From Lepidodermella squamata (taxonomy: Eukaryota; Animalia; Gastrotricha): DNA of 64,000 nucleotides. The notes under the pieces are model-generated. The model saw only the letters and a program-made list of their open reading frames with translations, did not search any database and was not told the DNA's origin. Within the stretch, counting starts at the first letter, position 1. Each line of letters opens with the position of its first letter. Below are positions 50,345 to 53,745 of the stretch, one piece after another. The DNA lies in assembly GCA_047495785.1 (NCBI GenBank), contig JBLDXI010000002.1, positions 2,108,001 through 2,172,000 of the forward strand, given 5' to 3'. Both the position numbers and the translations under genes were made by a program.

Positions 50345-53300
50345 TTAGCCAATTGGGGTTCTGCAGATTGGGCATGTAGGGTGTTCCCTTAACCATCGAT
50401 TTACACACTCCATGTGAAATACTAAATTGAAAAATATGATGAATAAAAATATGCTTTGATTTCAGGATGCGAAAAAACCAACCATGTTTGCATTTCAGAC
50501 GACGAGTGTTGCAAGCAAGTTTCACGACCTCGAGATAGCAAATCGGGCACTGTTCCGGCACATCGAGGTTCGAAACCGTTTCCGCTATTAAATTTGAAAA
50601 AAATTGAAAAAAAATCAGCTCAACCGATTAATTTTAAAAAACCATTGCCGCCCGTGTGTAGTAATTCTTTCGAGGCTGTGTACAATTTTTCCGCCAATAA
50701 AAAATAGTACCGATCGCGGCTTGGCGCTTTGCTGAAAATCTCCGCCTCTGCTTGCACCGTAAAATTGACAACACGATCTTTCTCGTTGTAGTTGCCTTGG
50801 TGCATCAAGTCGACAACAAATTTGTCTATAATCTTTTTTCTATCTGGCGTTGAAAAATTCCTCTGCCACGTATGGACCGTGGAAACATCCAACGGCTCGC
50901 CGATTCGCGACGATTTAACTGCACCACCGCTGCTGCTACCCGAACCTTTCGCCTCCTCAGGCTTCGATTCAACTTCCATCGAAACAGTAACAGGCGCGCT
51001 TGACGTCTGAGCCGGCTTTTGGCTGCTGGCGTCGAATAGCGGCTTCGACAACGTAGAAAGCATTCGAACTTCCTTACAAACCGGACATTCAGCATCCTTG
51101 CAATTCTGCCAGTGCAAAATTATTTGACGCGTTGATAAACAGCTTTTATCTATATAAATCGAATTTAAAATAAAATTTCGAAATTTTTTGAAAATTACAT
51201 TTGCAATCCTTGTCGTTTTTGCATCCTCTCAAATGTTCGATCACGTCTTTCATTCGCTTGCAATAGGCCACCTTGCAGTTGTTGTTGCCGCTGCTGGCGC
51301 TGTCTTCGGTAGATGATGATGGCAGTTGAACCGGGGCTGATGTAGACGATGCTGGTTCAATGACTTCGGCCAGCGATTTTGCTAGGGCGTCGCGTTTCGC
51401 ACATTTATGCGCGTGAAGTATAAGAATCAATTGATTTTGAATCCCAATCCTCTTCTCCTCCGTAAGGCCCTGGTTTTTCGAGCTCTAAACAAGAAAAAAT
51501 GTTGGAAAAATGAGTTTAATCGTTATTGAAGCTAATCACCGTGGGAGGTTGGCGAGCTTCAACGTAAGCAGCGGGAGCCGATAACGACGATGCCTCGATG
51601 CTAGTTTTGCCAGACGGATCATAAGCCATCGGTGCCGAAGTAGTCTGCAACGGGATAGCTTCCCTTTGATAATTGGATCCTTCCGATGAAACTGAAGGAA
51701 CACCTGGTTGAGAGGCGTATCCTGAAGAAGCGCTCGAATGGTAGCCAGAGCTTCCACTTGACGCCACCGAAGGGTCTGAAGTAACACTGTGCTGATAGGT
51801 CGATCCTGAAGAACCGCTCGAATAGTAGCCAGAGCTTCCACTTGACGCCACCGAAGGGTCTGAAGTCGATGAGTGGCCGGCATTTACTAGCAGTGGAGCT
51901 ACGCTGCTAACACCAAAGGCTGCCGACGATTGGTAGCCGGAATCTGTATTGCTTGAATAAACTGCCGTTGTTGGTATTCCTCTAACACTAGAGACTGTCG
52001 GAACCATTGAAGGATCACCCTGCTGACTGCTGGATCCTAAAACCATAGGAGCCGATAACGCCGGTGCTTCGACGTTAAATTTGGCATAATTCGGGTCAAA
52101 GGTCACCGGTGCCGAAGTAACTTGCGAAGCTGGGAAAGCTTCTTTTTGATAGTTGGAACCTGTAGTAACTGACGAGCCGTAGCCAGAATCTTTACCGCTG
52201 GAGTCTTTTGAAACCACAGAAGCAAGACTCTGGGGATATCCGATCGAACCAGCCGACGTTGCGATTCCAGAATCATTGCTGCTGATGCTTGAAAATCCTG
52301 CTTGCTGTTGTCCTACGCGAACATTTTTACCAGAATGAGGCAAAGATATCGATGCAGCTGGCGCAGATTTGAAAATTATCTCTTCCTCGTCGTGAAGTTT
52401 CTTCGCAAATTCGTAAGGGTCGTTTAAGAAAGGTTTCTTTAGAATTTCAGAGGCCGCGGGTCGCTGGCTAGGATCATCAACCACTAGGCTGTAGCACAGG
52501 TCCTCAAAATCCACAGAGAACTTTGCATTTGGGTGTTGAATCTTTCGAGAATCCCAACTGGGACATCACCGAATATTTGATAGTTGATAAGAGCACGGGT
52601 ATAACTTACCGAGCACATGCCTCAGGTAGGGACATGACAGTCTCACATTCAAAAGCAGGCACTTTCAGACACGCTATTTCATAGAATACGACACCTAGGG
52701 CAAAAATGTCTGTTTGTTTTGTGAAATTCGCTCCTTCTTTCCACAAGTCTTTAGGAATGTACACGGCTTCCTCGCGGTCCAGTTCGTGTAGCGACTTCAG
52801 CCTACGCGGGGAACATAGCCAAGAATAGAAAGAAATTAGGGAAATAAACTCACTGTTTACGTTTGACTAAGCCAAAGTCCCCTAGCTTAATCATATCAGT
52901 CGAAACTGATTGTACTAAGGAGACATTCTGCGGTATATATATAAGGTAAAAATTTCGTCATTTTTCATCGCAGAAACTTACATCAGCCTTGATTTCGCGG
53001 TGGACAATGTCACGCTCGTGAAGATATTCAACCGCCATTGCAAGCTGGACAAGCCAAAGTTTTATTTGGTCTTCATCGAAAGGTTGTTCCTTGTTTCGTT
53101 TACTGATAATTTTTCGCATATTATCTAAAAAATATTGCAATAATTTTAGAATAATTTAATTTTCAAAATTTAATTTCGATTAATAATCCTTCACCCCACC
53201 CACTTGTGTCCGCAGCGCACTGCCGCCGGCAAGCGCATATAATCTTGTGACCCCGCGTCATTGATATCTTTCACTTATTTCGTCTCCCCTATTTATGTGA

Positions 53301-53745
53301 TATCATAGCATAGCATAGCATAGCATTTTCTTTATTTTATCTTTTCCTTGATCAACGGTGATATCAATGAACAATAAATATTTGAATTTAGAATTTAGAA
53401 TTTTCAAAAACAAAATAACTAACCGGCGTTGAAACATTGCACAACGACACATGAGGCCGCTCCAATTGGCACGATATCCATAACGCGAACCATGTTCGGA
53501 ACAAGCATACCCTTCAATTTTTTGTACTGGAAAAAAGGAATGAATTGCAGGTAGATTTATATTTAAAATGAATTTATCACCTCTTCCAGAGATTTTAGAA
53601 CATCTTCGTCGGGTTGCTCAGCCATATAGGCTTTTTTCAAGGTGGGCGTCTTTCGGCCAGGGACCTTGAACGCATAACTTCCAATTGTAATCGATTTAAA
53701 TTGAGCTGGCAGCTCAGCAGCATTTTCGGATGTACTCGTTGCCAT
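50345..53745 (-). CDS. Chimeric NEK-like pseudokinase - Ser-rich linker - TAZ1 - KIX - RING-H2 protein, 10 exons, 888 aa
   Basis: Exons 53745-53581, 53526-53424, 53124-52982, 52927-52854, 52801-52610, 52557-51540, 51484-51199, 51149-50643, 50584-50483 and 50421-50345 (2667 nt, all GT-AG, in frame). Kinase: WLVQLAMAVEYLHERDIVHREIKADN, IKLGDFG, DIFALGV. TAZ: QNQLILILHAHKC...HWQNCKDAECPVC. KIX: RDRYYFLLAEKLY. RING-H2: CPIC...CKHVFHMEC...CPIC. Confidence 0.85.

What the first reader, a model, noticed from the sequence alone, without database searches (positions are those of the whole stretch)
50345..53745. Pseudokinase-TAZ1-KIX-RING-H2 chimera: a candidate CBP/p300-mimic E3 ligase for transcription factors
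Seen: five or six unrelated-looking ORF fragments splice through nine canonical introns into one 888-aa frame. It carries a TAZ domain with all 12 His/Cys zinc ligands, followed by a KIX domain (the order found in the CBP/p300 N-terminus), with no bromodomain or HAT. It ends in an intact RING-H2 and starts with a NEK-like kinase fold. Known: CBP TAZ1 binds HIF-1alpha, CITED2, RelA and STAT2 activation domains; KIX binds pCREB, Myb and MLL; RING-H2 domains recruit E2s. Inference: the CBP transcription-factor-capture modules were rewired to a ubiquitin ligase, giving a decoy coactivator that could bind and ubiquitinate activated transcription factors. I know of no described protein with this architecture.
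Basis: partly seen in the sequence, partly recalled or inferred. Interest (0 to 1): 0.92.

Follow-up and report, generated by a model that had tools for sequence, protein, structure and literature searches.

The report
Coactivator-mimic RING ubiquitin ligase gene
An animal gene joins copies of the two transcription-factor docking domains of the coactivator CBP/p300 to a ubiquitin-ligase RING finger, and probably to a degenerate kinase, so it may tag activated transcription factors for destruction; the domain combination is real and belongs to a small unannotated family, but its transcripts and activity are untested.

Summary

- **Domains found:** a NEK-like kinase domain with HRD changed to HRE; a 290-aa Ser-rich linker; a CBP-type TAZ1 with all 12 zinc ligands; a KIX domain whose predicted fold matches solved CBP KIX structures; and a canonical C-terminal RING-H2.
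- **TAZ1-KIX-RING is one unit:** unannotated, intronless 242-320 aa proteins from metagenome assemblies have the same order in one open frame. They form a 100/99-supported clade with the window's TAZ-KIX, beside a true CBP.
- **The kinase link is less certain.** Arguments for it: the TAZ exon has no start codon, its frame opens at the acceptor, and a 55-nt, 27%-GC, in-phase GT-AG intron joins it to the kinase/linker exon.
- **Not unprecedented as a design:** plant BTB-TAZ adaptors, rice KIX-F-box proteins and fish TAZ-KIX-SOCS-box proteins (found here) are parallel fusions.

This is a new variant of a known kind. The scan noted putative paralogues 111 kb away in the same genome.

The parts
50345..53745 (-). 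Whole gene model: 10 exons, 9 GT-AG introns, 888 codons plus stop
   Evidence: An in-frame stop lies immediately upstream of the ATG at 53745 (read from the sequence).
52419..53745 (-). Kinase-like domain (model residues 1-272; exons 1-5 and the start of exon 6), NEK-like and degenerate
   Evidence: Colinear Pkinase hits on exons 3, 5 and 6. NEK1 is the best full-length PDB match to exon 3. Exons 1-2 (the N-lobe) have no detectable kinase match.
52994..53002 (-). HRE in place of the catalytic-loop HRD (catalytic Asp changed to Glu)
   Evidence: Alignment to NEK1 pairs ILHRDIKS with IVHREIKA.
52871..52879 (-). DFG motif, retained
   Evidence: Alignment to the PKR and ACK1 motif K(I/L)GDFGL.
51540..52418 (-). 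Ser-rich (26% Ser) low-complexity linker, in the same exon as the kinase C-lobe, with in-frame internal duplications
   Evidence: Composition. An 84-nt tandem repeat at 51683-51850, and a module at 51574-51642 copied from 52048-52119 at 474/477-nt spacing.
51485..51539 (-). Intron 6: the junction that links the kinase/linker exon to the TAZ exon
   Evidence: 55 nt, GTGATT...TTTAG, GC 0.27, phase 0 on both sides, stops in all three frames. It is the only donor at the usual intron length with a near-consensus sequence. An ATTAAA at 51520 overlaps the read-through stop.
51067..51457 (-). TAZ1 zinc-finger domain (residues 575-688), split by intron 7 (51150-51198), with a roughly 30-aa Ser-rich loop insert
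   Evidence: zf-TAZ hits 1-47 and 50-72. All 12 ligands found. PDB TAZ1 chains score E 2e-8 against 4e-4 for TAZ2.
50653..50877 (-). KIX domain (residues 752-826)
   Evidence: Pfam KIX and KIX_2 above their cut-offs. AlphaFold2 model pLDDT 80-91. The top seven Foldseek PDB hits are CBP/p300 KIX, probability 0.99-1.00, target TM-score 0.67-0.76.
50585..50642 (-). Intron 8 (KIX to RING junction); alternative in-frame donor at 50624
   Evidence: Intronless homologues run from KIX into RING through a 13-aa spacer, which favours the 50643 exon end.
50363..50549 (-). RING-H2 finger (residues 842-883), split by intron 9 (50422-50482)
   Evidence: zf-RING_2 hits 2-23 and 25-44. The C3H2C3 pattern matches.
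50345..50347 (-). Stop codon

Best explanation
This is a protein-coding gene of an unidentified invertebrate animal. Its C-terminal 320 residues belong to a small, unannotated family of RING-H2 ubiquitin ligases. In that family the target-binding part is a duplicated N-terminal module of the coactivator CBP/p300 (TAZ1 followed by KIX). At this locus the TAZ1-KIX-RING cassette has most likely been captured as the 3' exons of an upstream gene. That gene encodes a NEK-like, catalytically degenerate kinase domain (HRE instead of HRD, no recognisable glycine loop) and a 290-aa Ser-rich disordered tail, so the product is one 888-aa protein. Proposed mechanism, by inference: TAZ1 and KIX dock the acidic or amphipathic activation domains of transcription factors, as they do in CBP. 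The RING-H2 then recruits a ubiquitin-charged E2, so bound factors are ubiquitinated instead of coactivated. The pseudokinase and the Ser/Tyr-rich linker would act as a regulatory or scaffolding input. Shown here: the domains, their order, the metal ligands, the KIX fold, family membership, and that the cassette needs an upstream coding exon. Inferred: use of the 51540/51484 junction from the kinase start codon, E3 activity, and the substrates.
For: Domains and order. KIX fold. TAZ-KIX-RING is one translated unit: intronless single-ORF homologues P0002, P0003, P0236, P0237 and P0238 are colinear with model residues 531/566-887. Common descent: the window's TAZ-KIX groups with P0002 and P0003 at 100/99, beside the true CBP fragment P0001. 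The TAZ-only tree gives a 7-member clade at 100/100. Need for an upstream exon: exon 7 opens at the acceptor's own TAG, has no ATG before the conserved helix 1 and first zinc ligands (EEKRIGIQNQLILILHAHKC), and its first in-frame Met lies inside TAZ1. Intron 6 is 55 nt, GC 0.27, phase-compatible, and the only near-consensus donor at the usual intron length. The linker up to that donor is one evolutionary unit with in-frame duplications and shares an exon with the kinase C-lobe. Parallel fusions support the functional logic: fish TAZ-KIX-SOCS box, plant BTB-TAZ CRL3 adaptors (PMC11101318), and rice KIX-F-box (PMC5668377).
Against: No RNA evidence was available. None of the 102 exhaustive-search hits, and none of the homologous loci, has a kinase. 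All relatives are stand-alone proteins of 242-320 aa that start with their own Met. An internal start, for example Met536 in exon 6, could give a stand-alone 353-aa product. An ATTAAA overlaps the read-through stop in intron 6 and could end a kinase-only transcript. Donors of introns 8 and 9 are weak (GTTTTT, GTTGGT). The TAZ1 carries a roughly 30-aa loop insert, and the KIX is only just above the Pfam cut-off (27.3 against 27 bits), so the binding specificity may differ from CBP. No orthologue was available for a dN/dS test.
Confidence: 0.55

Rival explanations
1. There are two transcription units on the same strand. One is a NEK-like pseudokinase gene with a Ser-rich tail that reads through the 51539 donor and stops at 51516 (...VISFNND*). 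The other is a stand-alone TAZ1-KIX-RING-H2 gene of about 350 aa, like its relatives. Its transcript would start inside the linker exon, for example at Met536 (MAYDPSGK...), and use the same intron.
For: All detected relatives are stand-alone proteins of 242-320 aa with their own Met. P0003 has a comparable 60-aa Ser/Thr-rich N-terminus that aligns to model residues 531-565. No TAZ/KIX homologue has Pkinase. ATTAAA at 51520 overlaps the read-through stop. An earlier scan note reports stand-alone paralogues 111 kb away (unchecked).
Against: It requires a promoter and transcription start inside another gene's coding exon. The 55-nt spacer cannot hold a 3' UTR plus a promoter. A trans-spliced or exon-7-initiated mRNA would have no in-frame ATG before the conserved TAZ1 helix 1. 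The last 25 codons before the donor are an in-frame copy of a linker segment 474 nt upstream, which ties them to the kinase tail.
Confidence: 0.25
2. The protein is not a substrate-directed E3. It acts as a competitive decoy that sequesters activation domains from the true CBP, with the RING serving only its own turnover or localisation.
For: It has the TAZ1 and KIX docking domains without any HAT, bromodomain or TAZ2. A 97-aa TAZ1-only relative with no RING exists on a virus-like element, showing that the docking domain alone can be a useful product.
Against: The RING-H2 is conserved in every full-length family member across about 30% sequence identity, with all eight ligands. Independent fusions of TAZ/KIX to SOCS-box, BTB and F-box modules point to ubiquitination of bound partners.
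Confidence: 0.12
3. It is a recent non-functional chimera or decaying gene copy with no selected function.
For: The kinase motifs are degenerate. The architecture is unique. No orthologue was found for a constraint test.
Against: All ten exons are open and all nine introns are canonical. All 12 TAZ and 8 RING ligands are intact, as is the KIX helix-3 motif YYxLLAEKxYxxxKEL. A 1017-nt linker frame without a stop is very unlikely by chance.
Confidence: 0.05

Closest known systems
CBP/p300 (KAT3) N-terminal region, TAZ1 (CH1) plus KIX
   Same: Same two domains in the same order. All 12 TAZ1 zinc ligands are present. The best PDB sequence matches are CBP/p300 TAZ1 chains (1l3e, 1l8c, 1r8u, 1u2n) and CBP KIX chains (1sb0, 1kdx), and the KIX fold matches. 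The family branches beside a true CBP. CBP itself has a reported E4 polyubiquitination activity on p53 (PMC6478392).
   Different: No bromodomain, CBP-type RING/PHD, HAT (KAT11), ZZ, TAZ2 or IBiD. A roughly 30-aa Ser-rich insert sits in the first TAZ1 loop, and the KIX is 5 residues shorter. It carries a canonical RING-H2, which CBP lacks.
Unannotated TAZ1-KIX-RING-H2 proteins from metagenome assemblies (P0002, P0003, P0236, P0237, P0238; truncated P0081)
   Same: Colinear over TAZ1, KIX and RING-H2 at 29-35% identity, and in the same clade.
   Different: They are intronless, 242-320 aa, start with their own Met, and have no kinase and no long linker. No kinase lies upstream in their loci.
Plant BTB-TAZ (BT1-BT5, MdBT2) proteins
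   Same: A TAZ zinc finger joined to a ubiquitin-ligase module. They act as substrate adaptors of CUL3-RING ligases (PMC11101318, PMC8774732).
   Different: The E3 link is a BTB domain that recruits CUL3, not an intrinsic RING. They have no KIX, carry a calmodulin-binding tail, are plant-specific, and arose independently.
Rice KIX-F-box proteins, and fish TAZ-KIX(x3-4)-SOCS-box 'p300-like' proteins (Myripristis murdjan XP_029933398, XP_029933400)
   Same: CBP-type docking domains fused to an E3 adaptor module (PMC5668377).
   Different: F-box (SCF) or SOCS box (Cul5/Elongin BC) instead of RING-H2. They are uncharacterised and sit in separate branches of the TAZ-KIX tree.
NEK-family Ser/Thr kinases
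   Same: NEK1 is the best full-length PDB match to the catalytic-loop exon (E 5.7e-6). There are weak NEK1/NEK7 matches to the activation-segment/helix-F exon. DFG and the catalytic-loop Lys and Asn are kept.
   Different: HRD changed to HRE. No recognisable GxGxxG. APE replaced (YIPKDLW). The N-lobe exons give no kinase hit.

Membership tests
CBP/p300 (KAT3) coactivator acetyltransferases | TAZ1 (CH1) zinc finger with three HCCC sites | tested here: met
   Pfam zf-TAZ across exons 7 and 8. All 12 ligands found. PDB TAZ1 chains score better than TAZ2 chains.
CBP/p300 (KAT3) coactivator acetyltransferases | KIX three-helix bundle | tested here: met
   Pfam KIX 27.3 bits (cut-off 27) and KIX_2 26.3 bits (cut-off 25.6). 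The fold matches CBP/p300 KIX.
CBP/p300 (KAT3) coactivator acetyltransferases | Bromodomain, CBP-type RING/PHD and the HAT_KAT11 catalytic core | tested here: not met
   No such Pfam hit in any exon. The gene ends at the RING-H2 stop codon. It is therefore not a CBP/p300 family member.
RING-H2 (C3H2C3) E3 ubiquitin ligases (PF13639 type) | C-x2-C-x(9-39)-C-x-H-x2-H-x2-C-x(4-48)-C-x2-C ligand pattern | tested here: met
   Residues 842-883 match the pattern. zf-RING_2 profile positions 2-23 and 25-44 are hit on the two exons.
RING-H2 (C3H2C3) E3 ubiquitin ligases (PF13639 type) | E2-dependent ubiquitin transfer | not testable with these tools
   The residues usually at the E2 contact are present in the sequence (Ile after Cys1, Trp after Cys6, Pro after Cys7). 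That is my reading from general knowledge, not a test.
Active eukaryotic protein kinases | Catalytic Asp of the HRD motif | tested here: not met
   HRE; alignment to NEK1 HRD.
Active eukaryotic protein kinases | DFG magnesium-binding Asp | tested here: met
   KLGDFGL aligned to the PKR/ACK1 DFG.
Active eukaryotic protein kinases | Glycine-rich loop and the beta-3 Lys / helix-C Glu pair | tested here: inconclusive
   Exons 1-2 give no kinase hit in Pfam or PDB. By eye, IGSYAFKV has one Gly, and TLKK and LEEY could supply the Lys and Glu.
TAZ1-KIX-RING-H2 family (unnamed; defined here) | Colinear TAZ1, KIX and RING-H2 with no other CBP domain | tested here: met
TAZ1-KIX-RING-H2 family (unnamed; defined here) | TAZ-KIX part forms a clade apart from canonical CBPs | tested here: met
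   Support 100/99 and 100/100 on TAZ alone. Caveat: the branches are long.
TAZ1-KIX-RING-H2 family (unnamed; defined here) | Stand-alone protein of about 300 aa with its own start codon | tested here: not met
   Exon 7 has no ATG before TAZ1 helix 1 and opens at a splice acceptor. The window's copy depends on an upstream exon.

The most novel reading that the evidence does not exclude
The full 888-aa protein is a signal-gated 'coactivator-mimic degrader'. A pseudokinase and a phosphorylatable Ser/Tyr-rich linker would control when CBP-derived TAZ1 and KIX domains capture activation domains of active transcription factors, or viral transactivators, and hand them to the RING-H2 for ubiquitination. 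It would belong to a lineage-specific family in an arms race with mobile or viral elements, one of which carries a TAZ1-only relative of this family.
Probability: 0.22. Interest if true: 0.8.

Novelty: new variant of a known kind. Interest (0 to 1): 0.6.

Why it matters
TAZ1 and KIX are the best-studied docking sites for transcription-factor activation domains. A natural protein that couples them directly to a RING-H2 would be an E3 whose degron is an exposed activation domain. That is a simple route to activity-coupled transcription-factor turnover, and a natural counterpart of engineered degraders. TAZ and/or KIX turn up fused to four different E3 modules: RING-H2 here, SOCS box in a fish, BTB in plants and F-box in rice. 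This suggests the solution is recurrent and convergent, and it gives testable candidates. The possible pseudokinase fusion would add a regulatory input not seen in any relative. A TAZ1-only relative on a protein-primed-polymerase element hints at a host-parasite dimension.

Tried and rejected
- **Own annotation:** the exhaustive HMMER search with exon 8 returned no hit above 45% identity, so this genome's proteins or transcripts are not in the library.
- **Word-index search with P0003:** found only itself plus unrelated RING proteins.
- **JGI metagenome and IMG/VR viral contigs:** scans with the family alignment found nothing. Viral origin was considered. The IMG/VR scan was negative, although L005 later showed a TAZ1-only relative on a PolB element.
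- **Paralogues in the window:** none.
- **Kinase upstream of homologues:** none in L001-L003.
- **Kinase classification:** this could only be done exon by exon, because a spliced protein cannot be passed by reference and I did not type long sequences. The N-lobe stayed unclassified.
- **dN/dS:** L001 against L002 gave only two codon differences, too few to use.
- **Protein self-BLAST of the linker:** uninformative. The DNA repeat finder worked instead.
- **Organism identification:** an intronless GPDH gave only 53-57% identity to animals of many phyla (best 65%, an unnamed metagenome protein), so the species stays unknown.
- **Trans-splicing/operon reading of the 51484 acceptor:** rejected, because exon 7 lacks a usable start codon.
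Full report
**Observation**

The region 50345-53745 holds a minus-strand gene.
- Eight introns are 49-61 nt and one is 299 nt.
- Intron GC is 0.14-0.40, against 0.38-0.51 in the exons.
- An in-frame stop directly precedes the ATG at 53745.
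- A second in-frame donor at 50624 would add six residues.

**Domains**

A spliced protein cannot be passed to the tools by reference, so each exon was scanned in frame. The Pfam hits are colinear across exons, which itself supports the splice model:
- Pkinase profile positions 90-126 (exon 3), 170-197 (exon 5) and 228-263 (exon 6).
- zf-TAZ 1-47 (exon 7) and 50-72 (exon 8).
- KIX and KIX_2 in exon 8, both above their cut-offs.
- zf-RING_2 2-23 (exon 9) and 25-44 (exon 10).

Further checks agree:
- Pattern searches on the model find all 12 TAZ1 ligands and a complete C3H2C3 RING-H2 at residues 842-883.
- Against PDB sequences, exon 7 matches CBP/p300 TAZ1 chains at E about 2e-8 and TAZ2 chains only at about 4e-4. 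The domain is therefore TAZ1-type.
- Exon 8 matches the end of TAZ1 and the CBP KIX.
- An AlphaFold2 model of exon 8 gives a KIX region with pLDDT 80-91. Its seven best Foldseek PDB hits are all CBP/p300 KIX, with probability 0.99-1.00 and target TM-score 0.67-0.76.
- The helix-3 motif YYxLLAEKxYxxxKEL is kept. From my own knowledge of CBP, it holds the pKID-contacting Tyr and Lys.

**Kinase part**
- Exon 3 aligns best to NEK1 among full-length matches, and the alignment shows IVHREIKA against ILHRDIKS. The catalytic Asp is therefore Glu.
- DFG is kept.
- Exon 5 gives weak kinase hits, including NEK1, NEK7 and pseudokinases such as KSR2 and ULK4.
- Exons 1-2 have no detectable kinase similarity. 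By eye, the glycine loop is reduced to IGSYAFKV and APE is replaced.

'NEK-like, probably pseudokinase' is a fair description. The state of the beta-3 Lys and helix-C Glu is unresolved.

**The TAZ1-KIX-RING cassette is a real, inherited architecture**

An exhaustive HMMER search of 1.84 billion representatives with exon 8 gave 102 hits, none above 45% identity.
- Two hits, P0002 (305 aa) and P0003 (309 aa), are TAZ-KIX-RING-H2 proteins. They align to model residues 566-887 and 531-884.
- Both are encoded as single uninterrupted ORFs on metagenome-assembly contigs. One contig also carries Cys-loop receptor fragments, so it comes from an animal genome.
- Because KIX runs into RING in one ORF there, the window's 50643/50584 and 50483/50421 junctions are supported by homology.
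- A profile search added P0236, P0237 and P0238. P0081, a 225-aa TAZ-KIX fragment already among the 102 exhaustive-search hits, groups with P0238 in the TAZ tree. All of these are unnamed and come from ENA only.
- Among the 91 hits below 1100 aa, only two representatives carry zf-RING_2. Two carry a SOCS box, one a BTB domain, and none Pkinase.

**Phylogeny**
- On the TAZ-KIX region alone, the window groups with P0002 and P0003 at 100/99.
- This clade sits beside P0001, a true CBP fragment with bromodomain, CBP-RING and PHD. P0001 comes from the same sample as the family member P0103.
- A TAZ-only tree gives a 100/100 clade of seven.
- Branches are long, so the internal order is unsure.

The family is best read as an old duplicate of the CBP N-terminus that gained a RING-H2.

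**Is the kinase part of the same protein?**

For:
- Exon 7's frame opens at the acceptor's own TAG. It contains no ATG before the conserved helix 1 and first zinc ligands. Its first in-frame Met lies inside TAZ1, and an out-of-frame ATG comes earlier. An upstream coding exon is therefore required, and a start by trans-splicing at this acceptor is unlikely.
- The 55-nt interval to exon 6 has the usual intron length, GC 0.27, stops in all frames and phase 0 at both ends. Its donor is the only near-consensus one at that distance.
- Exon 6 contains both the kinase C-lobe and the whole Ser-rich linker. The last 25 codons before the donor are an in-frame copy of a segment 474-477 nt upstream.

Against:
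- Every relative is a stand-alone protein of 242-320 aa with its own Met, and no kinase lies upstream in their loci.
- Met536 could start a 353-aa product.
- ATTAAA at 51520 overlaps the read-through stop.
- No RNA data could be consulted.

I put cis-splicing of exon 6 to exon 7 at about 0.8. I put the full kinase-to-RING protein being the main product at about 0.65-0.7.

**Mechanism**

Shown: two CBP-type activation-domain docking modules and an intact RING-H2 lie in one reading frame, conserved as a set across about 30% identity.

Inferred: TAZ1 and KIX bind activation domains and the RING-H2 recruits an E2, so bound factors are ubiquitinated.

The inference gains weight from independent parallels:
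- Fish 'p300-like' proteins with TAZ, three or four KIX domains and a SOCS box.
- Plant BTB-TAZ proteins, which serve as CUL3 substrate adaptors (PMC11101318).
- Rice KIX-F-box proteins (PMC5668377).
- CBP's own reported E4 activity on p53 (PMC6478392).

A pure decoy role, and a role for the pseudokinase and linker as a phospho-regulated switch, remain open.

**Comparison and novelty**
- It is not a CBP/p300 family member, because it has no bromodomain, HAT, ZZ or TAZ2.
- It meets the sequence definition of a RING-H2 E3.
- It fails the HRD test for an active kinase.
- I found no named protein and no paper with TAZ1-KIX-RING-H2. KIXBASE lists HAT, TAZ, bromodomain and ZZ as the usual companions of CBP-type KIX.

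Because fusions of coactivator docking domains to E3 modules are known in plants, I class this as a new variant of a known kind. The kinase fusion is a unique but unverified extra.

An earlier scan note (s1-368326) reports tandem KIX-RING and TAZ1-KIX-RING genes 111 kb beyond this window in the same genome. I could not read that DNA.

**Context and limits**
- The window carries ordinary animal genes: class-C GPCRs, a Sushi-repeat protein, a kinesin, a GT15 glycosyltransferase and a reverse transcriptase.
- An intronless GPDH is only 53-57% identical to animals of many phyla, so the species has no close relative in the databases.

Noticed in passing
L005:4903-5196 (Logan contig SRR24297604_102942), with L005:10138-13005 and L005:7804-8697: A 97-aa stand-alone TAZ1-only ORF (P0239) is the window TAZ's nearest relative in the tree: 56% identity over 95 kept columns, inside the 100/100 family clade. 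It lies on a 35-kb contig of about 20 tightly packed, mostly same-strand ORFs. These include a protein-primed type-B DNA polymerase (DNA_pol_B_2, 45 bits) and a separate RING-H2 protein. The contig looks like a Polinton/Maverick-like or viral element carrying a coactivator-domain mimic.
   Followed up: partly
P0006 and P0008 (Myripristis murdjan XP_029933398 and XP_029933400): Fish proteins annotated 'p300-like' or 'uncharacterized' consist of TAZ plus three KIX domains, or four KIX domains, followed by a C-terminal SOCS box. This is an independent fusion of CBP docking domains to an E3 adaptor module.
   Followed up: partly
window:51516-51525: An ATTAAA hexamer overlaps the stop codon that would end the frame if intron 6 were retained (...VISFNND*). 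It could allow a kinase-plus-linker-only isoform through intronic polyadenylation.
   Followed up: no
window:51574-52119: The Ser-rich linker was built by in-frame duplications. There is an 84-nt tandem repeat (51683-51850, 82% identity), and a roughly 70-nt module at 51574-51642 copied from 52048-52119.
   Followed up: partly
window:28309-29448: An intronless NAD-dependent glycerol-3-phosphate dehydrogenase gene. Its best database identities are only 53-57% to animals of many phyla (65% to one unnamed metagenome protein), so the source species has no close sequenced relative in the collection.
   Followed up: partly
window:927-3275 and window:16236-18653: Two paralogous single-exon ORFs of about 800 aa. 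Both have an ANF_receptor ligand-binding region, and the second also has a 7tm_3 domain, so they look like class-C GPCRs.
   Followed up: partly
window:48056-49498: A single-exon Glyco_transf_15 (alpha-1,2-mannosyltransferase) ORF lies immediately downstream of the RING gene. It scores Pfam 79.6 bits. An earlier scan note flags it as a horizontal-transfer candidate.
   Followed up: partly
window:59342-62251: Consecutive minus-strand ORFs include a reverse transcriptase (RVT_1, 73 bits). This is probably a non-LTR retrotransposon copy.
   Followed up: partly
window:38711-43456: The end of a kinesin motor domain (58 bits) is followed by a 1248-aa ORF that looks coiled-coil by composition. It is probably one long kinesin-like gene.
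   Followed up: no
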